Source: Dimorphilus gyrociliatus (taxonomy: Eukaryota; Animalia; Annelida). Taken from it: DNA of 46,856 nt. The translations under genes were made by a program, and so were the position numbers. The notes below the pieces were generated by a model. That model worked only from the letters and a program-made list of their open reading frames with translations, was not told where the DNA came from and ran no database searches. Of this stretch, positions 1 through 46,856 are shown piece by piece; within the stretch, counting starts at the first letter, position 1, and every line of letters begins with the position of its first letter. The stretch spans positions 1-46,856 of the forward strand of contig CAJFCJ010000086.1 in NCBI GenBank assembly GCA_904063045.1. The letters are read 5' to 3'.

Positions 1-327
1 CTAAATAATAAATAAAATTCTCTAACTCAGCATATTGTTCCTTTTTAAGCATATTTAGCTATCTTCTATTGCGGTAATTAAGAAACATTTTTAATGATTA
101 TCTCTTCCTTTTCTAGGCTATTTGGGTTCAAAAAACACTTTTTTATCATAACTCATAAACTTTTCAATTAATTCCTGAGGATTAATTGAGGTATCCTCAA
201 CAAGTTGACTTCTTTCAATCAATTGTTCGCCTAGACTTTGTATTTTCTTATTAATTAAACTGTGAAGCGACACTTCTACAGAGTCAGCTGAGAATACAGT
301 GCTTAATAGATTAAACATGATTAGCAT
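1..327 (-). CDS. 5' part of the 345-aa putative secreted acidic protein (third copy, cut by the window edge, with an indel)
   Basis: Same N-terminus as 16198..17235 and 40641..41678. The frameshift near 120 is probably a consensus error. Confidence 0.8.
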
Positions 328-867
328 GGGCTGCTATAAGTTTCTATACTTTATACTTTTTCTGTAAAAGGACAATTTGATTTTTATATCTCATCAAAAT
401 TACTTCAATCTTATAAATATTTGTTTTAAAAAATAATTATTCTATTTCAATTTAGCTAAATTACTAGAAACACTATTTAAATTAAAATATTATGTTATAC
501 ATTTTTTGATAAATTATTCCCATTTGGTGTTACACGTCAGTTTTTACTTATTTGACAAAAGACAAAAGTTTATAAGAAATAGTTATTGAATAATTTCCAC
601 TGAAACATTTATATCATAAAATTTACTTAAAAAAATACAAGTTGAAAATAAATTCTATAACCAAAGAGAATTAAAAATTAGTGAAGTATTTAGTTTTAAA
701 TACTATCTTATTTAAAATATAAGTATATCTCTTGCTTAACTGAATTAATGGCTAGACTAGCAATTTATGATAATATAACATAAATTTATAACAAGTTATA
801 GCTTAAATTTTAATTATGAATAGAAAATTAATAAAGGTTGACTTTGTGTCTTCTTTATATTATTTAA

Positions 868-2786
868 GTAGGGTCGAACAATACACCCCTCAAAGAATAA
901 ACGCGCCCTAGTTTTCTATTAATTTACTACAAAAAAAACATTTTTTTATTATTTTTGAACTCTTTTTGTTATTTTGGTAACGACAAATAAACACCCCTAC
1001 CAAAATAGCACAAATCGCTTAGGGTGGGATAAGTAAATCAATAGGATTTTTGATTTTTTTGTCAAAAAAACAATGAACAAACGCCTCTACCAAATTACTA
1101 CAAAAAATTCCTAATAATTAAATATAAAATTTTTCCTTAAATATTTTTAATTATTAATCAATAAATTTGTCAGTAATCTTAAAAAATTACCTTTATTTAA
1201 AATATTATATCAATACATTTTTCAATTCTTAAAACTATAACAATTTTAATTTATTTATTATTTTTTGTACATTTGTGATATATCATATATTTAATTGTTT
1301 TGATACGATCTTTATAGTAAAAATAATGTTTTAAAAGTTTTTGACATTTTTTGTCCCATGCCAAAAATTCCTAATATTAATACTTCTACCGAAAAAGATC
1401 AATTAATTGCTTATTTAAGAAATACGATATACCCTAATGGTCTTAGTAAATACCAAAAACGTACATTTAAAACCAAAGCACAACAGTTTTTAATAAAAAA
1501 CAATGAGTTATATTTAAAGAAAGGGCCAGAAATCAGAAAGTATATAAGCAGCTATGATGAAGAAGGAAGAAACACTATAATCTAACAATTTAATTTACCA
1601 CGCCATGCTTGTTCTAGAAAAATAAAGCAGAATATAGAAGCCCACTATATTAATATTACAGAGTCTTATATAAAAAATTATATTTCATCATGTGAATGAT
1701 GTCAGAAAGTAGTCCCTATATCTAGTATGCGCCAATTAGACCTATAGTCGTATATAGTGTGTATGAAAGATTACAAGCTGATATAATCGATTTATCTAGA
1801 TATGCAGAGCTTAATGAAGGATATAAGTACATACTTAGTTTGATAGATTGTTTCTCAAAATATGTATTCAGCTAAAAATTAAAAAATAAACAAGCTTCAA
1901 CAGTATACAATATTTTTGCAAATATATTCAGAATTGAAGGACCATGGATTATACTACATACGTATAATGGTCGTGAGTTTATAAATAATAATATGCTTGG
2001 ATTAGTAGTAAATATAATATATCTCACATAACAGGTAGACCCAAACATCCTCAATACCAGGAGTAATAGAGAGGCTTAATAGAACCCTAAAACTGAGGTT
2101 AAGGAAAGGATTAGAAGGAACAGAAAAATGGATTAACTTACATGATGATATTGTTTATCAATATAATAATACAATAAATAGCGCTACAACCTTCAAACCT
2201 TATGTGTTGTTCAGAGGAAAAGATCCGAACAATGTTAATTTTGACAATATAAAGAACATAATAGACGAATTAGAGATAATAGAGAATTAAATATAGCAGA
2301 TAAATGTATTCTTGCAGAGATAATAGAGAATTAAATATAGTAAATGTATTCTTGCAAAGGATTTTAGTACAAATATAAATACAAGACGCCATCCTTTAGT
2401 TTTATTATATTATAGTGAAATTTATACAGTTATTGATATCTCTAATAACAATTTCACTATTAAAGATGATCTACAAAATCAAAAAATCGTAGACAAATCC
2501 CTATTAAAAATATTTATTGAAAAATTTTATATTAAATTAGTAGAAATTTTTGTGGTAATTTGATAGGGGCGTTTATTCGTTAATGTTTGACAAAAAAATC
2601 AAAAAATCCTATTAATTTACTTATCCCGCCCTAAGCGATTTGTGCTATTTTGGTATGGGCGTTTATTCGTCCTTACCAAAATAACAAAAAAGGGTTCAAA
2701 AATAATTAAAAAAAATTTTTTTTGTGGTAAATTAATAGGAAAACTAGGGGTGTTTATTCGTTGAGGGTGTGTTATTCGTTCTAACA
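868..2786 (+). mobile_element. Ginger-like DNA transposon with retroviral-type (rve) integrase, defective, copy 1
   Basis: ~280-bp imperfect TIRs (868-~1150 and ~2503-2786) with TGT...ACA-type ends; the first T is missing in this copy but present in copies 2 and 3. Contains a disrupted integrase ORF. Confidence 0.75.
1358..2250 (+). pseudogene. Integrase pseudogene (H2C2-like region plus rve core)
   Basis: Fragments LQADIIDLS, LSLIDCFSKY, HT(Y/D)NGREF, GRPKHPQYQGVIERLNRTLK, YQYNNTI(N/H)SAT. In-frame TAA at 1583 and TGA in CE*CQ are shared by all three copies. Confidence 0.85.
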
Positions 2787-3099
2787 CAAATTATAATTTA
2801 AATTTCAATTATGAACAGAAAATTAATAAAGATTAGCTTTGTCTCTTCTTTATATTATTTAATGTCTAGTAATTATTAAATATGTTTATAATATGAGTTA
2901 TATGTTGAATTTATAAAAATTACTCATATCTTCTTTTTATAAGACAAAAATTGTAATAAATAAAATATTATAAACATTTTACTCCTTTTCAAGTTATCAA
3001 TGTTATATAACTCAAAGGAAAGTCTATTCGTTAATTACTTCCCTAAAGAAATATAAATGAAATAACTAAAACCTTTAATATAAATAAAAATTGTTTAAT

Positions 3100-4306
3100 C
3101 TAAACAACATCACCACTTATGTTCTCATTTAATAGCTTCACTTTATTAAAAACATCATTCATAATAGATTCTAGATAATTGGAATAACCATTATTAGCGA
3201 TGTTTTCATCGTCTTCTATTCCTTTTTAATGTATAGATTTCTTAAGCCATCACCTCCACCGTTTTTAGCTGCAAATTTATCAGAGTCAGAATATAACAAT
3301 GAAATAATATAAAATTTAATAGGAAAAAACAATTTAAACGCAATGTTAAACATTAAACATATATAAATCATGTTTTTTGTTATACTAGTGAAATCGTAAT
3401 AAATCATGAGATCAAACATATTTCCAAAATAGCCAATAAACAGCGCAATTAATAAATTAAATACTGAATAAAGAATATCGATAATAAAATTATACCCTGA
3501 ATTAATAAAGTTAATACCAAATAAAATGATTCCGTTATGGTCTTCCATTTCCTCAGAATTTTTAATTAATATTACTTTTTTACTAATAGTTCTGAAGGTA
3601 GTGAAAGTAGAAAATTCCGTAGGTGATTCATAAACTTCTATAGATCCTAACATATCTCTTGTTTTTTTATTAATTTTTAAATCAATATTTTAACAGCCAC
3701 ATCGGGATTTCCAAAGAAAATGTCATATATTGGATAAAAAATGCAAATAGTAGAAATAACTGCAAGAACATATATATTCATAATAAATACATAAATGAAT
3801 AGAAAAAAGAACCAAAATAAGGCATAAAAAAGAAAAAATATTATTAAATTGCCACCTATAGTGTTTAGTATATTAAAAAAGGTTGTAAAACAAAATATAG
3901 GAGCAACTAAACTATAAAAAATAAGAAGTATAATTATAGTACTGCTTTTATGACTAAGTTTGGATTCTAAAAATGTTTGTATTTTATCAAAATAATTATA
4001 TTTTAGAACCGCTATCTCCATTAGAAATGACAAAAAATGAAGAAAGATATAAGTTACTTTTTGAAGCTTCCTTTTAAATAAATCTGTCTTTATCTTCTCT
4101 TCTGATATGTCTGTATCTTTATAAATGTTTATTGCTTCTTTTTTATTAATTGTAAGAATATCATAAAGATAGATACAAACTCTAACTGTAAAATTAAAGT
4201 ATATCATGTAATGTAGTAAATCTTTCATTGGGGTAGACTCAATCACACTTTTATGAATACCTCCTTTTTTATATTCAAAAAAAGCATAAATTAATACTAT
4301 AACCAA
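3100..4306 (-). CDS. M48/Ste24-like multi-pass membrane protein, copy 1 (split by homopolymer indels)
   Basis: Mirror of 12208..13398; ORFs 3216..3653 and 3677..4306 join to give the same protein. Confidence 0.6.
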
Positions 4307-4933
4307 TTTTTGACTTTTTCTAAAAAAAATTGTATTTAACTGATTTCCATTTTAGTTTTTATAATATTCCATTTTGAAAAAAATCTCGAAAAATACGCCT
4401 ATAGCCAATTTTAGATTCTTTCCAAAAGTGTAATATTAATAATAAAAAAATCATGAGCACCCGCCATTCTGAATAAATAAATAAACAACTTTGTTAAAAA
4501 TTAATATTGTAATAGTATTAAAATCAGTTCAAGTCTGTTATAAGTGGCTTTTAAATTTTTTATTATATACATACCCCTGACAAAACCCCCTAAAATTTAC
4601 CAAACAGAAAAAAACTTATAGAGATTTAAAAATACATATTTTTGATTGGTTAAAAAGACAGAAAAAAATATGAACATCAATCTCTTAATTTTAATAATAA
4701 ATAATTAGCAGGTATAAAGGATACTACACCCCCTTCGATCAATAAAATGATTTTTCAAAAAATAGAGGAAATCTAGGAGAAGGGATTATTAAGTTTTTTT
4801 AAAACTTTTTTTTCTTCAAAATTTGGTTATAATAAAAACTAATTGAATAAATTTATTAAAAATACATTGTAAGCTTCAATTACATAGTATTTTATAAATA
4901 AATGTTTTGATGTTATTAATTTCATATCTTTGT

Positions 4934-5239
4934 TAATATTTATGTTATTTCTCCTAATGCATCTTTTTAAAACCGACCATTGGTCTTCAATATTTCGAGT
5001 ATTTGCAACAGTGTCAGGATCTATAAATTTATTCTATGATTTACTTTGTCATGAATAAATCCCTTTTCTGTTAATCCATCATATCCTGCCCAAGAGTCTG
5101 TATAAGTTAGTATAGTATCTTGCTGTACATATTTATCAACTATATCATTTATAGTTTGCTTTCTTCTATTATTTACCTCTACAAACCCCTTTTTTTTAGT
5201 CATTACAGTGGGATGTGAAGTTATAGCATCCTTTTTCAA
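4934..5239 (-). pseudogene. Merlin (IS1016/IS1595-like) transposase relic, mirror copy
   Basis: YTDSWAGY...HDKVNH...F/IDPDT...NTRNIEDQWS motifs; mirror of 11255..11560. Confidence 0.8.
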
Positions 5240-5489
5240 AAAGCGTGTGATGAAAAATTAATTTAATGAGGAATTAAAACTTTTGTTAATGTATTCTTTT
5301 TTGGTTGGAAAAAAATTTGGTATCTATTTTTTGTTTCAAAGCCATAAAATCTACATAAGATTCATATTTGTGCTCAAGTAATATTTTAATTACCTCGTTT
5401 ATTTTTATAATTGCATCTTTATATTCTGTTTTTAATTCTTTAAAGTCAACTGCTTGACTTTCTTTTACTTCTATCTCATCAGAATTTGA

Positions 5490-6661
5490 ATTTTCTGTTT
5501 CATCTTTTATATCGTCTTCTCTGGTCGTTATTTTTTTACCTTTGTAAATCGGACTTGCTTTATTTCAGTAATTCAAAACTATTTTTGTGGGAATTGATTT
5601 TATTGCTTGAGAATTCCAAGTAAATACTTCATATATACTTACTTTTTTTTATTGAATCGCAATAGTTCATGTCTAACATTCCATGTTTATTTACCATATA
5701 AGTTTTTAAGTAATTATAACATTTTTCTTTGAATGACTTTATTATTACCATATCAAGAGTTTGTAATAAATTTGTTGCGTTAGCAGTTATAAATAAAAAT
5801 CTAACATGAGAGAAACTGTTGATCTTGTCTCCCAAAAATTTATCTTAAACAACGCATATTTTTCGTTTTGATCGTTTCATTTCTTTATTTATATCCTAAA
5901 AATACAAAAAAAGTTTTCTTTAGTGCCCAAGTTGTTTTATTTGTAGTGTATTTTATCTTAATGCTGTTTAATGGTTTGTTCTTTAGTTTTCTAGGCTTTT
6001 TTGAGTTTTCTACAATTAACGTGCCCAAAAAATCTCCATTTATATTTACTGGCGCTATAACCGATATCCTTGTTTTAGTTTTCGAAATTCCTTTTGAACT
6101 TTATTTTTTATCTTTTTGTATATAAGATCTGTTGTTTGGTTGCTTATAAAAAGACTTGTTTCATCACTATTAAAAATATTTTCTGAAGAATATGATTGTT
6201 TTACTGATTCAAACTCTTTCAAAAAAATTTCAACTTCTGATTCGTTAGCTTTTGATATTGTCTGATGAATTTTAACACTTTTTAATTGATTTTCTTCGAT
6301 AAACTTGCTTATAGAATAATCTTTATACTTATATCCTCAAATTGTAGATTGTTTTTTTAATAGTTTTTAGTGGTTGTTTTAGCCGGTTTTTCGATAAAGG
6401 AAATCCACTTTTTGCTAGGTTTTTAAATTTTCTCTAGAATGTGTTTATCGAACTCTTGATATTTATTAATTCTTGTTTTATTTTCTGGTAAATTTTTTTG
6501 TTCTAATATAAAGTGTAGATTATTTTAATGATTTAACTTGGAAAATAGTAACACCAAAGTTGTTGGCTATATTTTTATATCCCCATTTTGGATTTTCTAC
6601 AATCTTCCGCGTAATTTCCTCTTTCTTTTTAATTATCAGTTTTTTTTTCCAGAGTTTCCAT
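5490..6661 (-). pseudogene. pogo/Tigger-like (CENP-B/DDE_1) transposase relic, mirror copy
   Basis: Mirror of 9831..11000; end approximate. Confidence 0.7.
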
Positions 6662-6899
6662 AGGTGCGCTAGAATTTATATTGTAAAATAACATATTATA
6701 TATTTGATAAATAGGAAAATTTTAGTATAAATAAAAAAAATAAAATGCGTGCGATGACTCTTAAAGTAGAATTAAACATGTAATAATTTAGAAACTATTA
6801 AAATTTATCAAATGAAGCTTTAGTTCCGTCTAAACAACATAATTTAATGTTATAGACTGTTTTATAGAAAGTTTACAACGTTTTTCATGTTTATTGCTG

Positions 6900-7505
6900 G
6901 GGGAAAGTTCGCCCAGTGTATTAAATTCTTTTTTTGAATCATAAAGCCGGAGGTCACATAGTTTATGTAGTATATTGTGCCATACATGGATTATTGCTGT
7001 TTTAAGGTCTGCTATTTCTTGGGATTATACTTTTAAATTTCACATTTAATATATTCCCATAGATTTTCTATTAGATTAAGACCTGGAGATTGGGAGGACC
7101 AAGAAAGCACTTTAATAATTTAAAATTCTTTTGTTATACTGCCTGGATGCTTAGGATCATTGTCGTGTAATGAAATTGAAGTTTTTTCTTCTATTAATCT
7201 CCTAGCTGGTGTTATTAGTTCATCTTTCAACCCCTCAAATTAGTCGAGAACATTCATTCTTTGATATATTATTTTAACTTTTACAAATCCATTATAAGTA
7301 AACCATCCCCAGTCCAAAATATTGCTTCTGCCAATCTTTAATGTTTCTTACGAATTCTTTTTTATATATCCTTTCCCAGTTTCTCTTTAGACTTTGACAT
7401 TTTCATCTGAATGGAATAAATTAAATTTACTTTCATCCGTGAAAAGCTGTTTTTAAGCTCATTAATTTAGCTAAAAAAATACTTTTAAATATTGCAAGTC
7501 TTCGT
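6900..7505 (-). pseudogene. Older Tc1 transposase relic, mirror copy
   Basis: Mirror of 8987..9590; boundaries approximate. Confidence 0.75.
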
Positions 7506-7509
7506 TATA

Positions 7510-8982
7510 CAGTGGTGTGCAAAAAAAATGGGCCACCCCTTTTTTCATAAATATAATACATATAAGACTATTTTAGAAATGAAGTGTAATAAGCGACTTT
7601 ACTAGTTAATAAACTCTTAAATATTTATATGGGTGTTTTTTCTTAAAACCTTTTTTCGTTTATTTTTAATTAAATTGTAAAAAACTAGTGTTCAAAAAAA
7701 ATGGGCCACTAAAATTTAATAATCTGTATGTCTTCCTTTAGCATTATATATAGCCAATACCCTTTTATGAAAACTCATTATATATGGTTGTAATATTTCT
7801 GGTGTAATAGAGTTCCATATTTTAAGTATTTCTTCTTTTAACTCTGCCTTCTTAAGTTTCCCTTTTTTCTTTAAACAACTCTTAATATATGCCCATATAT
7901 GCTCTATTGGATTTAAATTAAGGCTCTGAGCAGGCCATTCTAGTGTTTCGATATTTTCTTCCTCTAACCATTGGGTCACAAGCCTAGATGTGTGCTTTGG
8001 ATCATTATCATGTTGAAAATAAACTGATTAAGACCCATTTTAGATGCAGAGGAACGGAGATTTTGTGCTAACACTTGTTTATATGCTGCTCCAGTCATTG
8101 TATCCTCAATAAAAACTAATTTTCCAGTGCCTCTATATGATATTGCACCCCATACCATAATGTTTCCACCGCCATGTTTAACAGTGGGAACAATATTCTT
8201 ACTATGATGTCTTTCACCTTTATAATACCTTACATATCTTGCTCCATCGCTACTAAAAAGATTAAATTTAACTTCATCTGAAAAAATAATAGTCTTTAAA
8301 GTTTCATTAGACATGCCTAAAAACTTCTCTGATAACTCGAACCATTTTTTGATATTTTTTGGTCTTAATAAAGGCTTCTTTATAGCTATATCAGTTAGTA
8401 ACCCTATGCTTTAAGTGTTCTTGACGCAGTTGATCTTGATATCATGATATCGAACACTTTACTTACCTTTTTTGTTATTTCTAGTGACGTTATAAAAGGA
8501 TTTTCTTGGTGTTTACGCCTAATAAAGTCTTTAATGGTATTACAAAGGATAGGTTTTCTTCCAGAACCATATTTTCGGTTTATAGGAGATCCTGTTCTGT
8601 ATAGTTTGGCTATTCTTTGTACTGTATATCTCCCAATGTTTCTCTTAATAGAAATAGAGTTTCATGTCATTCCATTTTTTAAATCTTCAACTATCAGGGC
8701 CTTTTCTAGATTACTGAGATGTTTAGACATAGGGCAAGAAAAAATTACACTCTATGAGTCAAAATGGAGGGAAATTTTCAGGTGGCCCATTTTTTTTGAA
8801 CACTAGTTTTTTACAATTTAATTAAAAATAAACGAAAAAAGGTTTTAAAGAAAAAACACCCATATAAATATTTAAGAGTTTATTAACTAGTAAAGTCGCT
8901 TATTACACTTCATTTCTAAAATAGTCTTATATGTATTATATTTATGAAAAAAGGGGTGGCCCATTTTTTTTGCACACCACTG
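7510..8982 (-). mobile_element. Tc1 transposon T1 (IR/DR type), defective transposase
   Basis: TA|CAGTGGTGTGC...GCACACCACTG|TA. ~200-bp TIRs (7510-7709, 8782-8982), each with outer and inner direct repeat CAAAAAAAATGGGCCAC. Confidence 0.95.
7716..8730 (-). pseudogene. Tc1 transposase of T1 (one in-frame TGA plus frameshifts)
   Basis: ATG at 8730 (MSKHLSNLEK), then GSGRKP, KKPLL, IFSDEVKF, TVKHGGGNIMVWG, WPAQSLNLNPIEHIW, KGRHTDY. Confidence 0.9.
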
Positions 8983-8986
8983 TATA

Positions 8987-9590
8987 ACGAAGACTTGCAA
9001 TATTTAAAAGTATTTTTTTAGCTAAATTAATGAGCTTAAAAACAGCTTTTCACGGATGAAAGTAAATTTAATTTATTCCATTCAGATGAAAATGTCAAAG
9101 TCTAAAGAGAAACTGGGAAAGGATATATAAAAAAGAATTCGTAAGAAACATTAAAGATTGGCAGAAGCAATATTTTGGACTGGGGATGGTTTACTTATAA
9201 TGGATTTGTAAAAGTTAAAATAATATATCAAAGAATGAATGTTCTCGACTAATTTGAGGGGTTGAAAGATGAACTAATAACACCAGCTAGGAGATTAATA
9301 GAAGAAAAAACTTCAATTTCATTACACGACAATGATCCTAAGCATCCAGGCAGTATAACAAAAGAATTTTAAATTATTAAAGTGCTTTCTTGGTCCTCCC
9401 AATCTCCAGGTCTTAATCTAATAGAAAATCTATGGGAATATATTAAATGTGAAATTTAAAAGTATAATCCCAAGAAATAGCAGACCTTAAAACAGCAATA
9501 ATCCATGTATGGCACAATATACTACATAAACTATGTGACCTCCGGCTTTATGATTCAAAAAAAGAATTTAATACACTGGGCGAACTTTCC
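8987..9590 (+). pseudogene. Older Tc1 transposase relic (catalytic half only) directly abutting T1
   Basis: FTDESKFNLFHSDE at ~9050, HDNDPKH at ~9325, WSSQSPGLNLIENLW at ~9390; many stops. Confidence 0.75.
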
Positions 9591-9830
9591 CCCAGCAATA
9601 AACATGAAAAACGTTGTAAACTTTCTATAAAACAGTCTATAACATTAAATTATGTTGTTTAGACGGAACTAAAGCTTCATTTGATAAATTTTAATAGTTT
9701 CTAAATTATTACATGTTTAATTCTACTTTAAGAGTCATCGCACGCATTTTATTTTTTTTATTTATACTAAAATTTTCCTATTTATCAAATATATAATATG
9801 TTATTTTACAATATAAATTCTAGCGCACCT

Positions 9831-11000
9831 ATGGAAACTCTGGAAAAAAAAACTGATAATTAAAAAGAAAGAGGAAATTACGCGGAAGATTGTAGAAAAT
9901 CCAAAATGGGGATATAAAAATATAGCCAACAACTTTGGTGTTACTATTTTCCAAGTTAAATCATTAAAATAATCTACACTTTATATTAGAACAAAAAAAT
10001 TTACCAGAAAATAAAACAAGAATTAATAAATATCAAGAGTTCGATAAACACATTCTAGAGAAAATTTAAAAACCTAGCAAAAAGTGGATTTCCTTTATCG
10101 AAAAACCGGCTAAAACAACCACTAAAAACTATTAAAAAAACAATCTACAATTTGAGGATATAAGTATAAAGATTATTCTATAAGCAAGTTTATCGAAGAA
10201 AATCAATTAAAAAGTGTTAAAATTCATCAGACAATATCAAAAGCTAACGAATCAGAAGTTGAAATTTTTTTGAAAGAGTTTGAATCAGTAAAACAATCAT
10301 ATTCTTCAGAAAATATTTTTAATAGTGATGAAACAAGTCTTTTTATAAGCAACCAAACAACAGATCTTATATACAAAAAGATAAAAAATAAAGTTCAAAA
10401 GGAATTTCGAAAACTAAAACAAGGATATCGGTTATAGCGCCAGTAAATATAAATGGAGATTTTTTGGGCACGTTAATTGTAGAAAACTCAAAAAAGCCTA
10501 GAAAACTAAAGAACAAACCATTAAACAGCATTAAGATAAAATACACTACAAATAAAACAACTTGGGCACTAAAGAAAACTTTTTTTTGTATTTTTAGGAT
10601 ATAAATAAAGAAATGAAACGATCAAAACGAAAAATATGCGTTGTTTAAGATAAATTTTTGGGAGACAAGATCAACAGTTTCTCTCATGTTAGATTTTTAT
10701 TTATAACTGCTAACGCAACAAATTTATTACAAACTCTTGATATGGTAATAATAAAGTCATTCAAAGAAAAATGTTATAATTACTTAAAAACTTATATGGT
10801 AAATAAACATGGAATGTTAGACATGAACTATTGCGATTCAATAAAAAAAAGTAAGTATATATGAAGTATTTACTTGGAATTCTCAAGCAATAAAATCAAT
10901 TCCCACAAAAATAGTTTTGAATTACTGAAATAAAGCAAGTCCGATTTACAAAGGTAAAAAAATAACGACCAGAGAAGACGATATAAAAGATGAAACAGAA
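9831..11000 (+). pseudogene. pogo/Tigger-like (CENP-B/DDE_1) transposase relic
   Basis: HTH-like start (METLEKK...), IFNSDETSLFYK at ~10315, FLFITANATNLLQTLDMVIIKSFK (compare the pogo QPLD-GII-SFK motif); frameshifted. Confidence 0.7.
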
Positions 11001-11254
11001 AATTCAAATTCTGATGAGATAGAAGTAAAAGAAAGTCAAGCAGTTGACTTTAAAGAATTAAAAACAGAATATAAAGATGCAATTATAAAAATAAACGAGG
11101 TAATTAAAATATTACTTGAGCACAAATATGAATCTTATGTAGATTTTATGGCTTTGAAACAAAAAATAGATACCAAATTTTTTTCCAACCAAAAAAAGAA
11201 TACATTAACAAAAGTTTTAATTCCTCATTAAATTAATTTTTCATCACACGCTTT

Positions 11255-11560
11255 TTGAAAAAGGATGCTATAACTTCACATCCCACTGTAATGACTAAAA
11301 AAAAGGGGTTTGTAGAGGTAAATAATAGAAGAAAGCAAACTATAAATGATATAGTTGATAAATATGTACAGCAAGATACTATACTAACTTATACAGACTC
11401 TTGGGCAGGATATGATGGATTAACAGAAAAGGGATTTATTCATGACAAAGTAAATCATAGAATAAATTTATAGATCCTGACACTGTTGCAAATACTCGAA
11501 ATATTGAAGACCAATGGTCGGTTTTAAAAAGATGCATTAGGAGAAATAACATAAATATTA
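11255..11560 (+). pseudogene. Merlin transposase relic (C-terminal DDE part)
   Basis: TDSWAGY, VNH, DPDT-ANTRNIEDQWSVLKR motifs typical of DDE_Tnp_IS1595/Merlin. Confidence 0.8.
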
Positions 11561-12207
11561 ACAAAGATATGAAATTAATAACATCAAAACATTTATTTAT
11601 AAAATACTATGTAATTGAAGCTTACAATGTATTTTTAATAAATTTATTCAATTAGTTTTTATTATAACCAAATTTTGAAGAAAAAAAAGTTTTAAAAAAA
11701 ACTTAATAATCCCTTCTCCTAGATTTCCTCTATTTTTTGAAAAATCATTTTATTGATCGAAGGGGGTGTAGTATCCTTTATACCTGCTAATTATTTATTA
11801 TTAAAATTAAGAGATTGATGTTCATATTTTTTTCTGTCTTTTTAACCAATCAAAAATATGTATTTTTAAATCTCTATAAGTTTTTTTCTGTTTGGTAAAT
11901 TTTAGGGGGTTTTGTCAGGGGTATGTATATAATAAAAATTTAAAAGCCACTTATAACAGACTTGAACTGATTTTAATACTATTACAATATTAATTTTTAA
12001 CAAAGTTGTTTATTTATTTATTCAGAATGGCGGGTGCTCATGATTTTTTTATTATTAATATTACACTTTTGGAAAGAATCTAAAATTGGCTATAGGCGTA
12101 TTTTTCGAGATTTTTTTCAAAAATGGAATATTATAAAAACTAAAATGGAAATCAGTTAAATACAATTTTTTTTAGAAAAAGTCAAAAATTGGTTATAGTA
12201 TTAATTT

Positions 12208-13398
12208 ATGCTTTTTTTGAATATAAAAAAAGGAGGTATTCATAAAAGTGTGATTGAGTCTACCCCAATGAAAGATTTACTACATTACATGATATACTTT
12301 AATTTTACAGTTAGAGTTTGTATCTATCTTTATGATATTCTTACAATTAATAAAAAAGAAGCAATAAACATTTATAAAGATACAGACATATCAGAAGAGA
12401 AGATAAAGACAGATTTATTTAAAAGGAAGCTTCAAAAAGTAACTTATATCTTTCTTCATTTTTTGTCATTTCTAATGGAGATAGCGGTTCTAAAATATAA
12501 TTATTTTGATAAAATACAAACATTTTTAGAATCCAAACTTAGTCATAAAAGCAGTACTATAATTATACTTCTTATTTTTTATAGTTTAGTTGCTCCTATA
12601 TTTTGTTTTACAACCTTTTTTAATATACTAAACACTATAGGTGGCAATTTAATAATATTTTTTCTTTTTTATGCCTTATTTTGGTTCTTTTTTCTATTCA
12701 TTTATGTATTTATTATGAATATATATGTTCTTGCAGTTATTTCTACTATTTGCATTTTTTATCCAATATATGACATTTTCTTTGGAAATCCCGATGTGGC
12801 TGTTAAAAATATTGATTTAAAAATTAATAAAAAAACAAGAGATATGTTAGGATCTATAGAAGTTTATGAATCACCTACGGAATTTTCTACTTTCACTACC
12901 TTCAGAACTATTAGTAAAAAAGTAATATTAATTAAAAATTCTGAGGAAATGGAAGACCATAACGGAATCATTTTATTTGGTATTAACTTTATTAATTCAG
13001 GGTATAATTTTATTATCGATATTCTTTATTCAGTATTTAATTTATTAATTGCGCTGTTTATTGGCTATTTTGGAAATATGTTTGATCTCATGATTTATTA
13101 CGATTTCACTAGTATAACAAAAAACATGATTTATATATGTTTAATGTTTAACATTGCGTTTAAATTGTTTTTTCCTATTAAATTTTATATTATTTCATTG
13201 TTATATTCTGACTCTGATAAATTTGCAGCTAAAAACGGTGGAGGTGATGGCTTAAGAAATCTATACATTAAAAAAGGAATAGAAGACGATGAAAACATCG
13301 CTAATAATGGTTATTCCAATTATCTAGAATCTATTATGAATGATGTTTTTAATAAAGTGAAGCTATTAAATGAGAACATAAGTGGTGATGTTGTTTAG
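12208..13398 (+). CDS. Peptidase M48 (Ste24/CAAX protease)-like multi-pass membrane protein, apparently lacking HExxH; true start uncertain
   Basis: Several TM segments. STFTTFRTISKKVILI resembles the Ste24 NAYF-G---KRIVL segment and SDSDKFAAKNGGGDGL resembles E-EAD-FA---GY---L. Family assignment is by motif recall only. Confidence 0.6.
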   Translation: MLFLNIKKGGIHKSVIESTPMKDLLHYMIYFNFTVRVCIYLYDILTINKKEAINIYKDTDISEEKIKTDLFKRKLQKVTYIFLHFLSFLMEIAVLKYNYFDKIQTFLESKLSHKSSTIIILLIFYSLVAPIFCFTTFFNILNTIGGNLIIFFLFYALFWFFFLFIYVFIMNIYVLAVISTICIFYPIYDIFFGNPDVAVKNIDLKINKKTRDMLGSIEVYESPTEFSTFTTFRTISKKVILIKNSEEMEDHNGIILFGINFINSGYNFIIDILYSVFNLLIALFIGYFGNMFDLMIYYDFTSITKNMIYICLMFNIAFKLFFPIKFYIISLLYSDSDKFAAKNGGGDGLRNLYIKKGIEDDENIANNGYSNYLESIMNDVFNKVKLLNENISGDVV

Positions 13399-13712
13399 AT
13401 TAAACAATTTTTATTTATATTAAAGGTTTTAGTTATTTCATTTATATTTCTTTAGGGAAGTAATTAACGAATAGACTTTCCTTTGAGTTATATAACATTG
13501 ATAACTTGAAAAGGAGTAAAAATGTTTATAATATTTTATTTATTACAATTTTTGTCTTATAAAAAGAAGATATGAGTAATTTTTATAAATTCAACATATA
13601 ACTCATATTATAAACATATTTAATAATTACTAGACATTAAATAATATAAAGAAGAGACAAAGCTAATCTTTATTAATTTTCTGTTCATAATTGAAATTTA
13701 AATTATAATTTG

Positions 13713-15653
13713 TGTTAGAACGAATAACACACCCCTCAACGAATAAACACCCCTAGTTTTCCTATTAATTTACCACAAAAAAAATTTTTTTTAATTATTT
13801 TTGAACCCTTTTTTGTTATTTTGGTAAGGACGAATAAACGCCCATACCAAAATAGCACAAATCGCTTAGGGCGGGATAAGTAAATTAATAGGATTTTTGA
13901 TTTTTTTGTCAAACATTAACGAATAAACGCCCCTATCAAATTACCACAAAAAATTTCTACTAATTTAATATAAAATTTTTCAATAAATATTTTTAATAGG
14001 GATTTGTCTACGATTTTTTGATTTTGTAGATCATCTTTAATAGTGAAATTGTTATTAGAGATATCAATAACTGTATAAATTTCACTATAATATAATAAAA
14101 CTAAAGGATGGCGTCTTGTATTTATATTTGTACTAAAATCCTTTGCAAGAATACATTTATCTGCTATATTTAATTCTCTATTATCTCTAATTCGTCTATT
14201 ATGTTCTTTAGTGTATTGTCTAACATAATTTATGATCTATCTCTTGCTAACTATAGAACATCCATATTGTCAAAATTAACATTGTTCGGATCTTTTCCTC
14301 TGAACAACACATAAGGTTTGAAGGTTGTAGCGCTATTTATTGTATTATTATATTGATAAACAATATCATCATGTAAGTTAATCCATTTTTCTGTTCCTTC
14401 TAATCCTTTCCTTAACCTCAGTTTTAGGGTTCTATTAAGCCTCTCTATTACTCCCTGGTATTGAGGATGTTTGGGTCTACCTGTTATGTGAGATATATTA
14501 TATTTACTACATAATCCAAGCATATTATTATTTATAAACTCACGACCATTATACGTATGTAGTATAATCCATGGTCCTTCAATTCTGAATATATTTGCAA
14601 AAATATTGTATACTGTTGAAGCTTGTTTATTTTTTAATTTTTAGCTGAATACATATTTTGAGAAACAATCTATCAAACTAAGTATGTACTTATATCCTTC
14701 ATTAAGCTCTGCATATCTAGATAAATCGATTATATCAGCTTGTAATCTTTCATACACACTATATACGACTATAGGTCTAATTGGCGCATACTAGATATAG
14801 GGACTACTTTCTGACATCATTCACATGATGAAATATAATTTTTTATATAAGACTCTGTAATATTAATATAGTGGGCTTCTATATTCTGCTTTATTTTTCT
14901 AGAACAAGCATGGCGTGGTAAATTAAATTGTTAGATTATAGTGTTTCTTCCTTCTTCATCATAGCTGCTTATATACTTTCTGATTTCTGGCCCTTTCTTT
15001 AAATATAACTCATTGTTTTTTATTAAAAACTGTTGTGCTTTGGTTTTAAATGTACGTTTTTGGTATTTACTAAGACCATTAGGGTATATCGTATTTCTTA
15101 AATAAGCAATTAATTGATCTTTTTCGGTAGAAGTATTAATATTAGGAATTTTTGGCATGGGACAAAAAATGTCAAAAACTTTTAAAACATTATTTTTACT
15201 ATAAAGATCGTATCAAAACAATTAAATATATGATATATCACAAATGTACAAAAAATAATAAATAAATTAAAATTGTTATAGTTTTAAGAATTGAAAAATG
15301 TATTGATATAATACTTTTAAATAAAGGTAATTTTTTAAGATTACCTGACAAATTTATTGATTAATAATTAAAAATATTTAAGGAAAAATTTTATATTTAA
15401 TTATTAGGAATTTTTTGTAGTAATTTGGTAGAGGCGTTTGTTCATTGTTTTTTGACAAAAAAATCAAAAATCCTATTGATTTACTTATCCCCACCCTAAG
15501 CGATTTGTGCTATTTTGGTAGGGGTGTTTATTTGTCGTTACCAAAATAACAAAAAAGAGTTCAAAAATAATAAAAAAATGTTTTTTTTGTAGTAAATTAA
15601 TAAGAAAACTAGGGCGCGTTTATTCTTTGAGGGGTGTATTGTTCGACCCTACA
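13713..15653 (-). mobile_element. Ginger-like integrase DNA transposon, copy 2
   Basis: Ends TGT (13713) and ACA (15653); ~280-bp TIRs; integrase fragments 14251..14523 and 14931..15158. Confidence 0.75.
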
Positions 15654-16197
15654 TTAAATAATATAAAGAAGACACAAAGTCAACCTTTATTAATTTTCTA
15701 TTCATAATTAAAATTTAAGCTATAACTTGTTATAAATTTATGTTATATTATCATAAATTGCTAGTCTAGCCATTAATTCAGTTAAGCAAGAGATATACTT
15801 ATATTTTAAATAAGATAGTATTTAAAACTAAATACTTCACTAATTTTTAATTCTCTTTGGTTATAGAATTTATTTTCAACTTGTATTTTTTTAAGTAAAT
15901 TTTATGATATAAATGTTTCAGTGGAAATTATTCAATAACTATTTCTTATAAACTTTTGTCTTTTGTCAAATAAGTAAAAACTGACGTGTAACCACCAAAT
16001 GGGAATAATTTATCAAAAAAATGTATAACATAATATTTTAATTTAAATAGTGTTTCTAGTAATTTAGCTAAATTGAAAATAGAATAATTATTTTTTAAAC
16101 AAATATTTATAAGATTGAAGTATATTTTGATGAGATATAAAAATCAAAATTGTCCTTTTACAGAAAAAGTATAAAGTATAGAAACTTATAGCAGCCC

Positions 16198-17235
16198 ATG
16201 CTAATCATGTTTAATCTATTAAGCACTGTATTCTCAGCTGACTCTGTAGAAGTGTCGCTTCACAGTTTAATTAATAAGAAAATACAAAGTCTAGGCGAAC
16301 AATTGATTGAAAGAAGTCAACTTGTTGAGGATACCTCAATTAATCCTCAGGAATTAATTGAAAAGTTTATGAGTTATGATAAAAAAGTGTTTTTGAACCC
16401 AAATAGCCTAGAAAAGGAAGAGATAATCATTAAACAATGTTTCTTAATTACCGCAATAGAAGATACGCTAAATATGCTTAAAAAGGAACAATATGCTGAG
16501 TTAGAGAATTTTATTTATTATTTAGATAGCAAACTTTCAGATCCAGATACTTTTGTTCATAATAAACCATGGATTTTAAATGAAAACCATTTACAAAGAA
16601 AAGATGATAGTATTGATTCTAAAAAAAAAACTAGAAAACTAAAAGAAACTATGCAAAATAAGTCTAAATTGAGATCAGAAAATGACTCGATGTTTGATGA
16701 ATCTTCTAAATCAATTCATGTCAAAAATTTAAGGTTAGGTAAGATTGTTATTCGGAACTTCCATTGTAATTCCATATTCAACGAAGAACCTAAAAATTCT
16801 ATAGGAAAGGAGATTTTAAGTTCATTGGAGGTTGATATAAATCCCTCTTCCGAAGATGAATATTCATCTAATACAGTTGATTCTACAGAGCTATCTTCAG
16901 ATGATAAAGATATATCAAGAACTTCTAAGCAAACAGACCAAGATAGTAGCTCTAGTGATGATGATTACCAAAAGGAAGATCTAGAAGAAGGAATTAACAA
17001 TAGTGAAGAAACCAAACCATTGCTAGAGGACTTTAATAGGGAGTTCAAAGAAAACGGTGAAGTAGTTACGAAGTATTACACTAATAATAAGTATGAAACA
17101 CTAAAAGAAGATGAAGCTTGTAATAGTACTAAGCGAAATGATGAAAAACAGCCAGAAACCGAAGTTATAAAGTCTGGTTTGAATAAAGAAAATGAACGAA
17201 TAATTTCAGAGTCGCATGAAATTAATAGTAATTGA
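16198..17235 (+). CDS. Hypothetical 345-aa protein with predicted signal peptide and acidic Ser/Asp/Glu-rich C-terminal half
   Basis: Long intact ORF; CCC directly before ATG; hydrophobic leader MLIMFNLLSTVFSA; identical mirror copy. Confidence 0.85.
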   Translation: MLIMFNLLSTVFSADSVEVSLHSLINKKIQSLGEQLIERSQLVEDTSINPQELIEKFMSYDKKVFLNPNSLEKEEIIIKQCFLITAIEDTLNMLKKEQYAELENFIYYLDSKLSDPDTFVHNKPWILNENHLQRKDDSIDSKKKTRKLKETMQNKSKLRSENDSMFDESSKSIHVKNLRLGKIVIRNFHCNSIFNEEPKNSIGKEILSSLEVDINPSSEDEYSSNTVDSTELSSDDKDISRTSKQTDQDSSSSDDDYQKEDLEEGINNSEETKPLLEDFNREFKENGEVVTKYYTNNKYETLKEDEACNSTKRNDEKQPETEVIKSGLNKENERIISESHEINSN

Positions 17236-19381: not shown

Positions 19382-19413
19382 GGATACAAAAATAAATTCT
19401 TTTAAATTTTGTT

Positions 19414-22800: not shown

Positions 22801-22812
22801 TAAAGACCCTAA

Positions 22813-25833: not shown

Positions 25834-25865
25834 GGTATATAAAAAAAATTCTCTTTTATTCTAAA

Positions 25866-32790: not shown

Positions 32791-32792
32791 AA

Positions 32793-32905
32793 AAACACAG
32801 TACTTGGATTTCCCAAGGGTGCCCCTCAGTACTGACCAAGCTCTTACTAGCTTAACTTCGGAGATCGGACGGGATCCGGTGTACCTAGCAGATATGACCG
32901 TGCAA
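32793..32905 (-). rRNA. 5S ribosomal RNA, mirror copy
   Basis: Reverse complement of 24981-25093. Confidence 0.93.
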
Positions 32906-41860: not shown

Positions 41861-42838
41861 GGCTGGAGTACCAATCTGTTCTACCCATTGGTGTGTGTCA
41901 AAAAAAAAAATTTAACCCTTGTAAAATGAATAATTTTTTGAATAATGAAACATTAAAAACCTTATTAAAGAGTTTATTGTCCCAAAATTCCCCAAGATAT
42001 TGTGAATTATGTAATGGTAGTGTATCTATTACACTAAAAAACAACCTTAACTTTACATATAAGTGTAAAACACGCTCATGTAGGAAGGAAAATGGTGTAT
42101 TTAAAAATACTATTTTTTATAGAACAAATTACCTGCTGTTTTTTAAAGTAATATGGTTATGGTTGCGTAATTATAACATAGATCAAATCATAGAGATATC
42201 AGGTTCAAATAAAAAAACCATACATAAATTTATTAAGTTATTTCTACCTAAAATGGAAAAATTTTATCTAAAAGCATTTGGGAAGATTGGAGGTGAAGGT
42301 GTTGTAATTGAAGCTGACGAATCTAAATTTGGGAGAACTAAGTACAATGTAGGTAGGACTGTAGAAGGTGTATGGGTGGTTGGTTTAGTAGAAAAAACGG
42401 AGCAAAGAAAAATCATACTAGTTCCAGTAGTTAAAAGGGACAGTATCACTATGAACACAATATTTGATGCATATGTCAAATCAGGATCTGTTGTAAATAC
42501 TGATCTTTGGAAAGGATACAGTAACATCAAAGAAAATTACAAACATTATACTGTTAATCATAAGCAGAACTATAAAGATCCTATAACAGGAGCTCACACA
42601 AACACAATTGAGGGGAATTGGAGGGCTATTAAAACTGAAGTACCTAATCATTGTAGAAAATTCACTGAGATTTTACCATACTTATCAAAGTTTATGATAA
42701 AAAGATGGTTTTCAGACAATTATTTCGAGGTTTTATTAAAATTTTTGATTTGTTAATTGTTTTTTTGTAAAAATAAACAAGGGTTAAATTTTTTTTTTTG
42801 ACACACACCAATGGGTAGAACAGATTGGTACTTTAGCC
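41861..42838 (+). mobile_element. Complete Merlin transposon (978 bp), present only in this arm
   Basis: 62-bp TIRs GGCT(GG/AA)AGTACCAATCTG... with 2 mismatches; perfect 8-bp TSD CATTTTTT (41853-41860 and 42839-42846); empty sites near 500 and 16020. Confidence 0.97.
41926..42756 (+). CDS. Merlin DDE transposase, 276 aa, intact
   Basis: Zn-ribbon CELC...CKTRSC; GGEGVVIEADESKFG, VNTDLWKGY, VNHKQNYKDPITGAHTNTIEGNW. First in-element ATG at 41926. Confidence 0.95.
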   Translation: MNNFLNNETLKTLLKSLLSQNSPRYCELCNGSVSITLKNNLNFTYKCKTRSCRKENGVFKNTIFYRTNYLLFFKVIWLWLRNYNIDQIIEISGSNKKTIHKFIKLFLPKMEKFYLKAFGKIGGEGVVIEADESKFGRTKYNVGRTVEGVWVVGLVEKTEQRKIILVPVVKRDSITMNTIFDAYVKSGSVVNTDLWKGYSNIKENYKHYTVNHKQNYKDPITGAHTNTIEGNWRAIKTEVPNHCRKFTEILPYLSKFMIKRWFSDNYFEVLLKFLIC

Positions 42839-45133: not shown

Positions 45134-45447
45134 CAAATTATAATTTAAATTTCAATTATGAACAGAAAATTAATAAAGATTAGCTTTGTCTCTTCTTTAT
45201 ATTATTTAATGTCTAGTAATTATTAAATATGTTTATAATATGAGTTATATGTTGAATTTATAAAAATTACTCATATCTTCTTTTTATAAGACAAAAATTG
45301 TAATAAATAAAATATTATAAACATTTTTACTCCTTTTCAAGTTATCAATGTTATATAACTCAAAGGAAAGTCTATTCGTTAATTACTTCCCTAAAGAAAT
45401 ATAAATGAAATAACTAAAACCTTTAATATAAATAAAAATTGTTTAAT

Positions 45448-46636
45448 CTAAACAACATCACCACTTATGTTCTCATTTAATAGCTTCACTTTATTAAAAA
45501 CATCATTCATAATAGATTCTAGATAATTGGAATAACCATTATTAGCGATGTTTTCATCGTCTTCTATTCCTTTTTTAATGTATAGATTTCTTAAGCCATC
45601 ACCTCCACCGTTTTAGCTGCAAATTTATCAGAGTCAGAATATAACAATGAAATAATATAAAATTTAATAGGAAAAAACAATTTAAACGCAATGTTAAACA
45701 TTAAACATATATAAATCATGTTTTTTGTTATACTAGTGAAATCGTAATAAATCATGAGATCAAACATATTTCCAAATAGCCAATAAACAGCGCAATTAAT
45801 AAATTAAATACTGAATAAAGAATATCGATAATAAAATTATACCCTGAATTAATAAAGTTAATACCAAATAAAATGATTCCGTTATGGTCTTCCATTTCCT
45901 CAGAATTTTTAATTAATATTACTTTTTTACTAATAGTTCTGAAGGTAGTGAAAGTAGAAAATTCCGTAGGTGATTCATAAACTTCTATAGATCCTAACAT
46001 ATCTCTTGTTTTTTTATTAATTTTTAAATCAATATTTTTAACAGCCACATCGGGATTTCCAAAGAAAATGTCATATATTGGATAAAAAATGCAAATAGTA
46101 GAAATAACTGCAAGAACATATATATTCATAATAAATACATAAATGAATAGAAAAAAGAACCAAAATAAGGCATAAAAAAGAAAAAATATTATTAAATTGC
46201 CACCTATAGTGTTTAGTATATTAAAAAAGGTTGTAAAACAAAATATAGGAGCAACTAAACTATAAAAAATAAGAAGTATAATTATAGTACTGCTTTTATG
46301 ACTAAGTTTGGATTCTAAAAATGTTTGTATTTTATCAAAATAATTATATTTTAGAACCGCTATCTCCATTAGAAATGACAAAAAATGAAGAAAGATATAA
46401 GTTACTTTTTGAAGCTTCCTTTTAAATAAATCTGTCTTTATCTTCTCTTCTGATATGTCTGTATCTTTATAAATGTTTATTGCTTCTTTTTTATTAATTG
46501 TAAGAATATCATAAAGATAGATACAAACTCTAACTGTAAAATTAAAGTATATCATGTAATGTAGTAAATCTTTCATTGGGGTAGACTCAATCACACTTTT
46601 ATGAATACCTCCTTTTTTTATATTCAAAAAAAGCAT
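45448..46636 (-). CDS. M48/Ste24-like membrane protein, copy 3 (indel-broken)
   Basis: Same translation as 12208..13398 up to a frameshift near 45775. Confidence 0.6.
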
Positions 46637-46856
46637 AAATTAATACTATAACCAATTTTTGACTTTTTCTAAAAAAAATTGTATTTAACTGATTTCCATT
46701 TTAGTTTTTATAATATTCCATTTTTGAAAAAAATCTCGAAAAATACGCCTATAGCCAATTTTAGATTCTTTCCAAAAGTGTAATATTAATAATAAAAAAA
46801 TCATGAGCACCCGCCATTCTGAATAAATAAATAAACAACTTTGTTAAAAATTAATA

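What the first reader, a model, noticed from the sequence alone, without database searches (positions are those of the whole stretch)
1..46856. Both giant palindrome centres are Tc1 transposons: an A'-T1-A-T2-A' inverted amplicon of a 19.2-kb gene unit
Seen: each mirror axis lies inside a Tc1 element, and the two elements belong to different families. In both cases the arms run outward from the inner edge of the ~200-bp TIR, leaving a ~1.07-kb unique spacer (7710-8781; 28409-29478). The unit between them (8983-28196) alternates in orientation, and 1-4506 recurs directly at 41351-46856 (period 41,350 bp). Known: fold-back or template switching at interrupted inverted repeats makes such structures (yeast ODIRA inverted triplications with dog-bone intermediates, human DUP-TRP/INV-DUP, Tetrahymena rDNA palindrome). 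Inference: paired long-TIR transposons could define a hairpin-ended or 41-kb inverted-dimer circular amplicon carrying Rpn6, cullin-like, RING, 5S and secreted-protein genes. Equally plausible: phi29/MDA fold-back chimeras primed at TIRs, or an assembler leaving each element through the wrong TIR.
Basis: partly seen in the sequence, partly recalled or inferred. Interest (0 to 1): 0.85.

Follow-up and report, generated by a model that had tools for sequence, protein, structure and literature searches.

The report
Twin palindromes centred on Tc1 transposons
A 47-kb contig, which belongs to an unnamed microsporidian parasite hidden in a marine worm genome assembly, carries a 19-kb block of housekeeping genes in alternating orientation, with each turn-round point inside a different Tc1 transposon; this looks like fold-back copying at the transposons' inverted ends, but no raw reads could be checked, so it is not yet proven to exist in the living cell.

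Summary
Arms 1-7717 and 16525-8772, and arms 16016-28412 and 41860-29475, are mirror copies. Each axis is the roughly 1.05-kb interior of a TA-flanked Tc1 element of the IR/DR type: T1 at 7510-8982 and T2 at 28197-29690. Their transposases are only 24-37% identical. Outside transposon-derived stretches the arms show no real substitutions, only homopolymer indels.

Three things are new. The window is a whole contig, and its genes are microsporidian, not annelid. The published library was not amplified, so MDA chimeras are out. The two contig ends differ (a 977-bp Merlin insertion and about 30 substitutions), so a uniform 41.35-kb circle is too simple.

My best reading (0.5) is that palindromic DNA really existed. 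A break at one Tc1 end let the 3' end snap back on the other terminal repeat and copy its own flank. This happened at both elements, giving a closed inverted-dimer amplicon or an inverted triplication. A technical origin (0.35) is not excluded.

The single read-laying run gave only RNA-like contigs and foreign T1 copies, so no junction was tested. The scan noted similar Tc1-centred palindromes on two other pieces of this assembly (s1-080500, s1-083166), which I did not test.

The parts
1..7509 (-). Left, partial copy of unit A in inverted orientation (arm of palindrome 1); it runs to the contig start.
   Evidence: it mirrors 16525-8983 with no substitution outside the repeat edge and 31 homopolymer indels. 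It also carries one 54-bp deletion plus a 40-bp tandem duplication at about 2250-2340.
7510..8982 (-). T1, a Tc1 element of IR/DR type. Terminal repeats are 7510-7717 and 8772-8982; the unique interior 7718-8771 is the axis of palindrome 1; TA lies on both sides.
   Evidence: The transposase reads in three frames. Both frame breaks fall at or near (8015, and about 10-20 bp from 8409) two single bases that T1-family copies in runs X8 and X13 have and the window lacks, so they are probably consensus errors.
8983..28196 (+). Unit A, middle copy, 19.2 kb. The genes sit in the centre and transposon debris at both ends.
   Evidence: Contents: 396-aa membrane-like ORF 12208-13398; 345-aa ORF 16198-17235; 411-aa ORF 18146-19381 (weak RING); Rpn6 21280-22379 (frameshifted in this copy); cullin-like ORF 22813-24798; 5S rRNA 24981-25094; 245-aa ORF 25096-25833; IS1595/Merlin-like fragment 26535-27014.
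28197..29690 (-). T2, a second, unrelated Tc1 element of IR/DR type. Terminal repeats are 28197-28412 and 29475-29690; the interior 28413-29474 is the axis of palindrome 2; TA lies on both sides.
   Evidence: The 338-aa transposase ORF 28413-29429 (-) is intact. A 97-98% identical copy lies on an unrelated Logan contig (L001).
29691..46856 (-). Right copy of unit A in inverted orientation (arm of palindrome 2); it runs to the contig end.
   Evidence: Against the middle copy it has 8 substitutions, 7 of them clustered at 26684-27000, plus 18-bp and 9-bp indels and about 30 substitutions at 43536-45002. Rpn6 is intact only here (35513-36613).
41862..42838 (+). Merlin/IS1595-type transposon present in the right copy only. 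It is flanked by a target-site duplication, CATTTTTTG.
   Evidence: One search shows the ends, about 36-bp terminal repeats, and empty sites at about 505 and about 16020. One search gives DDE_Tnp_IS1595 at E = 4e-13.
32792..32905 (-). Second copy of the 5S rRNA gene, the mirror of 24981-25094.
   Evidence: RF00001, 83 bits, for both copies.

Best explanation
The contig comes from an undescribed microsporidian living in the Dimorphilus gyrociliatus culture. In that parasite, DNA molecules existed in which a 19.2-kb gene block is joined to its own mirror image through each of two Tc1 elements.

The likely route has four steps, all inferred:
1. A double-strand break forms at one outer end of a Tc1 element. 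Cleavage of one end by the transposase would leave a 3'-OH exactly at the element's last base.
2. After the 5' strand is resected, that 3' end anneals to the other 208-216-bp terminal repeat on the same strand, leaving the roughly 1.05-kb interior as a loop.
3. Fill-in synthesis copies the flank, giving a hairpin-capped end.
4. Replication turns the hairpin-capped end into a palindrome: flank', TA, whole element, TA, flank.

The same event at T1 and at T2 closes the block. The product could be a dumbbell, an inverted-dimer circle of about 41-42 kb, or, after reintegration, an inverted triplication.

What the sequence shows directly: the two mirror junctions sit at intact Tc1 elements, the contig closes on itself without any exit, and the copies are distinguishable. 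Which of the three topologies exists is not resolved.
For: Structure. The junction sequence is what priming from within the terminal repeat predicts: TA, then a complete element with a single interior in one orientation, then TA, then the mirrored flank.

Two unrelated Tc1 families serve as axes, so the shared property is the long-repeat architecture, not a particular sequence.

The contig covers more than one full period and never leaves into unique flank. This suggests that mirror-junction molecules were the main form in the data.

The copies are not one molecule read twice. Differences include Merlin in one copy only, with a target-site duplication; an 18-bp in-frame indel; a 54/40-bp variant; and clustered substitutions.

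The library was unamplified (PMC7854359).

The element boundary is independently supported. T1-family contigs in two foreign metagenomes stop at 8986, 4 bp past the repeat end.

Background from papers. Fold-back priming at inverted repeats next to a break gives hairpin-capped chromosomes and then inverted duplications. Mre11-Sae2, which opens such hairpins, works poorly on loops over 12 nt (PMC10622511). Microsporidia lack classical end joining (PMC6635534), so transposase breaks need another outlet.
Against: No raw read spanning a junction was seen. The only read-laying run returned RNA-like contigs with zero depth on T1 (X1, X2) and foreign T1 copies without the flanks (X8, X13).

The contig has a poor consensus: about 1-2 homopolymer errors per kb per copy, with different genes frame-broken in different copies. 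That points to low coverage, where a few odd molecules can shape a contig.

The block carries Rpn6 and a cullin-like gene, with no evident reason for amplification.

Substitutions between copies lie only in transposon-derived stretches. They could therefore be alleles or polishing cross-talk rather than differences between true copies.

The normal chromosomal junctions (other flank-T1, T2-other flank) that most in-vivo models require are not in this contig.
Confidence: 0.5

Rival explanations
1. Technical origin. The mirror junctions come from a few fold-back molecules made during DNA extraction or SMRTbell preparation of very AT-rich DNA, or from an assembly or haplotype-merging error. The true locus is a single copy, other flank-T1-A-T2-other flank, and its two haplotypes (with and without Merlin) were laid out as opposite arms.
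For: This is a low-coverage contaminant contig with many indel errors, built with PBcR, Quiver, Pilon and HaploMerger2. The left and middle copies are substitution-identical, as expected if one fold-back read supplied both, while the right copy looks like a second haplotype. Other Tc1-centred palindromic pieces are noted in the same assembly, one apparently filling its whole window (s1-080500, s1-083166; untested).
Against: No amplification step was used. From my own knowledge, the standard 20-kb protocol removes single-stranded tails with exonuclease VII before any polymerase is added, and repair polymerases would not copy 7-17 kb. Missed-adapter reads are centred on fragment ends, not on a complete single-orientation transposon interior, and no adapter is present. 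An overlap-layout assembler places each read once, so it cannot mirror a single-copy locus without reads that carry the mirror junction. The contig passes through both elements without breaking, which argues that mirror junctions were not a small minority.
Confidence: 0.35
2. ODIRA in the strict sense. At two diverging stalled replication forks the leading strand switched to the lagging-strand template at the Tc1 terminal repeats. This expelled a dumbbell that replicated into an inverted-dimer circle and may have reintegrated as an inverted triplication.
For: The A'-T1-A-T2-A' order with an inverted centre copy, and junctions at pre-existing interrupted inverted repeats, are the ODIRA hallmarks (PMC10766183; PMC4689423). 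The structure is shown.
Against: ODIRA junction repeats are 2-14 bp long and mostly 40-80 bp apart, a spacing attributed to the size of the lagging-strand gap. Here the repeats are 208-216 bp long and 1,054-1,062 bp apart. No origin can be shown inside A.
Confidence: 0.08
3. Two different Tc1 elements each inserted into the central TA of a pre-existing perfect giant palindrome.
For: Removing each element and one TA leaves a perfectly symmetric sequence with TA at its centre. Tc1 elements favour AT-rich symmetric targets (my own knowledge).
Against: This needs two independent hits on the exact centre base pair of 15-kb and 25-kb structures. Spacer-less palindromes of that size are not stably maintained. 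It also leaves the origin of the palindromes unexplained.
Confidence: 0.03

Closest known systems
Break-induced fold-back priming giving hairpin-capped chromosomes and inverted duplications (yeast sae2/mre11 mutants; human fold-back inverted duplications) - PMC10622511, PMC3907307
   Same: There is an interrupted inverted repeat at the axis. The spacer is kept once, and the arms are identical and run outward from the repeat. Long loops escape hairpin opening.
   Different: The repeats there are 3-15 bp natural repeats or engineered palindromes, and the product is a dicentric that breaks. Here the repeats are the 208-216-bp ends of a transposon with a roughly 1-kb loop. Two such events bound one block so that it closes on itself. 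The break could be made by the element's own transposase.
[quoted passage not shown]
   Same: An inverted-dimer circle or dumbbell and an inverted triplication, with junctions at pre-existing interrupted inverted repeats.
   Different: Repeat size and spacing lie far outside the ODIRA range. No origin is shown and no selection is known.
Repeat-mediated extrachromosomal amplicons of Leishmania, and the Tetrahymena rDNA palindrome (recalled from my own knowledge, not read here)
   Same: In a unicellular eukaryote, dispersed or short inverted repeats seed large palindromic extrachromosomal DNA.
   Different: Those amplicons are linear with telomeres, or are developmentally programmed. Here there are no telomere repeats and the seeds are intact DNA transposons.
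Palindromic chimeras of whole-genome amplification (PMC6218980) and missed-adapter PacBio reads
   Same: They produce long mirror-image sequence in long reads.
   Different: They need amplification or are centred on fragment ends. Neither explains two axes that are complete Tc1 elements in an unamplified library.

Membership tests
Tc1/mariner, IR/DR subgroup (T1 and T2) | TA target duplication and CAGT termini | tested here: met
   TA|CAGTGG...CCACTG|TA for T1 and TA|CAGTAG...CTACTG|TA for T2.
Tc1/mariner, IR/DR subgroup (T1 and T2) | DDE transposase with paired-like HTH domains | tested here: met
   T2 matches HTH_Tnp_Tc3_2 (3e-15) and DDE_3 (3.5e-13). T1 aligns to T2 over residues 4-338 in three frames.
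Tc1/mariner, IR/DR subgroup (T1 and T2) | Long terminal repeats (about 200 bp) with an outer and an inner direct repeat | tested here: met
   the repeated 17-20-mers start at 7520 and 7693 in T1, and at 28202 and 28386 in T2.
ODIRA amplicon | Junctions at short interrupted inverted repeats whose arms lie within about 100 bp | tested here: not met
   The arms are 208-216 bp long and 1,054-1,062 bp apart. ODIRA uses arms of 2-14 bp, mostly 40-80 bp apart.
ODIRA amplicon | The amplified segment contains a replication origin | not testable with these tools
   Only AT-rich 51-bp tandem repeats at 22417-22790 were seen. This is no evidence of origin function.
ODIRA amplicon | Inverted triplication or inverted-dimer circle | tested here: inconclusive
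   The order A'-T1-A-T2-A' and the end overlap fit. Copy number, topology and chromosomal flanks are unknown.
Fold-back-primed palindrome | The interrupted inverted repeat lies at the axis, with the spacer present once | tested here: met
Fold-back-primed palindrome | The mirror junction is present in native DNA molecules | tested here: inconclusive
   the runs available hold no DNA of this locus across T1. Runs X1 and X2 have zero depth on 7600-9199.
MDA or phi29 chimera | The library was made from amplified DNA | tested here: not met
   Methods of PMC7854359: genomic DNA went directly into a 20-kb PacBio library. That the window belongs to this assembly rests on the scan's notes.
Missed-adapter SMRTbell read | The axis lies at a fragment end, with an adapter or no spacer | tested here: not met
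   Each axis is a complete transposon interior.
Microsporidia (origin of the contig) | Housekeeping proteins are closest to microsporidian orthologues | tested here: met
   the named Rpn6 hits are all microsporidian (Astathelohania contejeani, Nosema granulosis and Ecytonucleospora hepatopenaei, 37-41% identity); unnamed hits reach 43%; the nearest cullin-like cluster is microsporidian. GC is 18-29% and the ORFs are intron-free and N/K/I-rich.

The most novel reading that the evidence does not exclude
The block is a self-contained small replicon of a microsporidian. It would be a hairpin-ended linear molecule or an inverted-dimer circle whose two turn-rounds are Tc1 transposons. The transposon terminal repeats would then act like hairpin telomeres, and the replicon would carry essential genes (Rpn6, a cullin-like gene, 5S rRNA). 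The same process would recur at other Tc1 copies in this genome, making active DNA transposons a routine source of palindromic gene amplification in an organism without classical end joining.
Probability: 0.15. Interest if true: 0.8.

Novelty: new variant of a known kind. Interest (0 to 1): 0.5.

Why it matters
If the junctions are real, this is a natural case in which intact DNA transposons supply the inverted repeats that seed giant palindromes. It would have happened twice, around one gene block, so that the block closes on itself. That would tie transposase-made breaks to the fold-back route of gene amplification known from yeast mutants and tumours. It would do so in a parasite lineage that has lost classical end joining, and it would give a testable source of copy-number change in microsporidia.

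If the junctions are technical, the finding still matters in two ways. It flags parasite contigs left in a published animal assembly. It also flags a failure mode at long-repeat transposons that would affect other long-read assemblies.

Tried and rejected
Read-level test. X1 and X2 behave like RNA: short contigs, depth 60-210 on the gene at 12043-13199, and zero on T1. X8 and X13 hold only other copies of the T1 family.

Exact-protein look-ups found no second contig carrying genes of unit A. Transposon proteins of this assembly are not on record, so other T1 or T2 copies in the assembly could not be fetched.

The findings look-up by sequence was blank.

No paper links Dinophilus or Dimorphilus with microsporidia. 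No paper was found on transposon-repeat-primed palindromes.

Rejected ideas:
- Telomere-bearing linear palindrome: no telomere-type repeats.
- Missed adapter.
- A giant fold-back transposon with 7-12-kb repeats: the arms carry housekeeping genes.
- Dating the duplication from arm divergence: substitutions lie only in transposon-derived stretches and are not clock-like.
Full report
OBSERVATION

A blastn self-comparison and the repeat finder confirm two giant palindromes. Palindrome 1 pairs 1-7717 with 16525-8772 around a 1,054-bp spacer (7718-8771). Palindrome 2 pairs 16016-28412 with 41860-29475 around a 1,062-bp spacer (28413-29474). The start of the window recurs directly at its end: 1-508 = 41351-41861 and 502-4506 = 42842-46856. 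A 977-bp insertion interrupts this recurrence, so the offset changes from 41,351 to about 42,340.

Both axes are Tc1 elements. T1 (7510-8982) and T2 (28197-29690) each begin and end with CAGT...ACTG and have TA on both sides. Their terminal repeats are 208 and 216 bp, each containing an outer and an inner copy of a 17-20-nt direct repeat, which is the IR/DR layout. T2 has an intact 338-aa transposase matching HTH_Tnp_Tc3_2 and DDE_3. T1 encodes the same kind of protein in three frames, 24-37% identical to T2, with no nucleotide similarity. They are different families.

The mirror symmetry simply continues outward from each terminal repeat through the TA into 7.5 kb and 12.2 kb (17 kb counting past the insertion) of flank.

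WHOSE DNA IT IS

The window is a whole contig: the Rpn6 protein it encodes is on record on one contig of 46,856 bp. The scan's notes name the assembly as Dimorphilus gyrociliatus. The genes, however, are microsporidian:
- The named hits of the Rpn6 protein are all microsporidian: Astathelohania contejeani, Nosema granulosis and Ecytonucleospora hepatopenaei, at 37-41% identity; unnamed hits reach 43%.
- The 661-aa ORF resembles a microsporidian cullin-like cluster in a feature search (a lead only).
- GC is 18-29%.
- The ORFs are long, intron-free and rich in N, K and I.

Earlier notes of the scan had already flagged microsporidian contigs in this assembly.

A JGI contig (L002) carries the same Rpn6 gene at 99.0% identity without gaps. 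Runs X1 and X2 hold pieces of the window at 100% identity. The organism is therefore real and recurs in independent samples.

HOW THE COPIES DIFFER

Global alignments show that nearly all differences are 1-3-base homopolymer indels: 31 in 7.7 kb for palindrome 1 and 20 in 12.4 kb for palindrome 2. These break different genes in different copies:
- Rpn6 is intact only at 35513-36613.
- The 411-aa ORF is intact only at 18146-19381.
- The 396-aa ORF is intact only at 12208-13398.

This is the signature of a low-coverage PacBio consensus. T1's two frameshifts fall at or near (8015, and about 10-20 bp from 8409) two single bases that T1-family copies in X8 and X13 have and the window lacks. T1 is therefore probably intact in reality.

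Differences that are not of this type:
- A Merlin/IS1595-type transposon (41862-42838) with about 36-bp terminal repeats and a CATTTTTTG target duplication, present only in the right copy. The empty sites are at about 505 and about 16020.
- An 18-bp in-frame indel in the cullin-like ORF (661 against 667 aa).
- A 9-bp indel.
- Seven transitions clustered at 26684-27000 in an IS1595-like ORF.
- About 30 substitutions at 43536-45002, inside an integrase-bearing transposon, in the right copy against both others.
- A 54-bp deletion plus a 40-bp tandem duplication in the left copy only.

Outside transposon-derived stretches there is no substitution apart from one mismatch at the inner edge of each terminal repeat. 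At least two, and probably three, versions of unit A were therefore present in the DNA. The pattern is not clock-like, though. It could reflect true copies, alleles, or polishing cross-talk from other transposon copies.

READ-LEVEL TEST

All runs offered are kept as Logan contigs. Unit A is held by X1-X5. T1 is held by a marine sediment metagenome (X8), a coral metagenome (X13) and runs of a third organism, but not by X1-X5.

The single read-laying run showed two things. X1 and X2 give short perfect contigs with depth 60-210 on the gene at 12043-13199, a few-fold on intergenic parts and zero across T1, which is RNA-like and uninformative for the junction. X8 and X13 give T1-family copies at 95-99% identity that stop at 8986, 4 bp past the repeat end, and no high-identity flank.

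This supports the element boundary but tests neither mirror junction.

WEIGHING THE EXPLANATIONS

The published methods describe unamplified genomic DNA, a 20-kb PacBio RS II library, and then PBcR, Quiver, Pilon, HaploMerger2 and SSPACE-LongRead. MDA chimeras are therefore out.

Missed-adapter reads are mirrored at fragment ends.

An overlap-layout assembler places each read once. It cannot mirror a single-copy locus unless reads carry the mirror junction, and this contig runs through both elements without breaking or leaving into other flanks. An in-vitro snap-back followed by fill-in would need kilobases of single-stranded DNA and 7-17 kb of synthesis. From my own knowledge, the standard protocol removes single-stranded tails with exonuclease VII before any polymerase is added.

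I therefore think palindromic molecules were probably present in the DNA sample. The arguments in this section are reasoning, not tests, and the low coverage means that a few molecules could have decided the layout.

MECHANISM (INFERRED)

Fold-back priming next to a break is established in yeast. Inverted repeats exposed by resection anneal within one strand, Pol delta fills in, a hairpin-capped end forms, and replication makes an inverted duplication. Mre11-Sae2 normally opens such hairpins but acts poorly on loops longer than 12 nt (PMC10622511).

A Tc1 element supplies a 208-216-bp repeat pair with a 1-kb loop. One-ended transposase cleavage would leave a 3'-OH on the last base of the element. 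Annealed to the opposite repeat, that end is positioned to copy TA and then the flank. This reproduces the observed junctions exactly.

Microsporidia lack classical end joining (PMC6635534), which removes the usual repair route for excision breaks.

Two such events, at T1 and at T2, close the 19.2-kb block into one of three forms: a dumbbell, an inverted-dimer circle of about 41-42 kb, or, after recombination with the chromosome, an inverted triplication.

The contig's 5.5-kb self-overlap and lack of exits fit a closed or endlessly repeating form. The difference between its two ends excludes a single uniform circle.

Strict ODIRA fits less well, because its junction repeats are 2-14 bp long and mostly 40-80 bp apart (PMC10766183).

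Insertion of two elements into the exact centres of pre-existing perfect palindromes is formally compatible with the sequence but very unlikely.

VERDICT

In-vivo fold-back at Tc1 terminal repeats is my best reading (0.5). A technical origin remains a serious rival (0.35).

If true, this is a new variant of a known kind: fold-back or ODIRA-type palindromic amplification seeded by intact transposons, in a microsporidian. The scan noted similar Tc1-centred palindromes on two other pieces of this assembly (s1-080500, s1-083166). I could not inspect them. They could mean either a recurrent biological process or a recurrent artefact.

Noticed in passing
window 1-46856 (whole contig): The contig is microsporidian DNA left in an annelid genome assembly despite four rounds of decontamination. 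Its Rpn6 is only 37-43% identical to any microsporidian protein on record, so the parasite appears to be unsequenced.
   Followed up: partly
L002:8-1124 against window 35521-36637: A JGI contig (sample 3300019033) carries the same Rpn6 gene at 99.0% identity with no gaps. It supports the right copy's reading frame and shows the parasite, or a sister strain, in an independent sample.
   Followed up: partly
window 7680-8986; L001: T1-family copies at 95-99% identity occur in a marine sediment metagenome and a coral metagenome. A T2-family copy at 97-98% identity occurs in run SRR23162985. Both Tc1 families are young and present outside this culture.
   Followed up: partly
window 8015 and 8409: Two bases that T1-family copies elsewhere have and the window lacks lie at or near T1's two frameshifts. 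The apparent decay of the T1 transposase is probably a consensus error.
   Followed up: partly
window 26684-27000 against 31202-30886: Seven transitions cluster within 320 bp of an IS1595/Merlin-like ORF, inside otherwise identical arms. This could be gene conversion from another copy, an allele, or polishing cross-talk.
   Followed up: no
window 23770 against 34134: An 18-bp in-frame indel lies in the N-rich repeat of the cullin-like ORF (661 against 667 aa).
   Followed up: no
window 875-1151 and 2503-2781 (also 13721-13997/15367-15645 and 43215-43492/44849-45125): A transposon of about 1.9 kb has 279-bp terminal inverted repeats 88% alike and integrase-like ORF fragments (14251-14523). It has long inverted ends too, but it is not a palindrome axis.
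   Followed up: no
window 22417-22790 (mirror 35117-35457): Tandem repeats of 49-51 bp fill the divergent intergenic region between Rpn6 and the cullin-like gene.
   Followed up: no
window 2250-2340: The left copy alone has a 54-bp deletion next to a 40-bp tandem duplication. It lies near the contig end, so it may be a consensus fault.
   Followed up: partly
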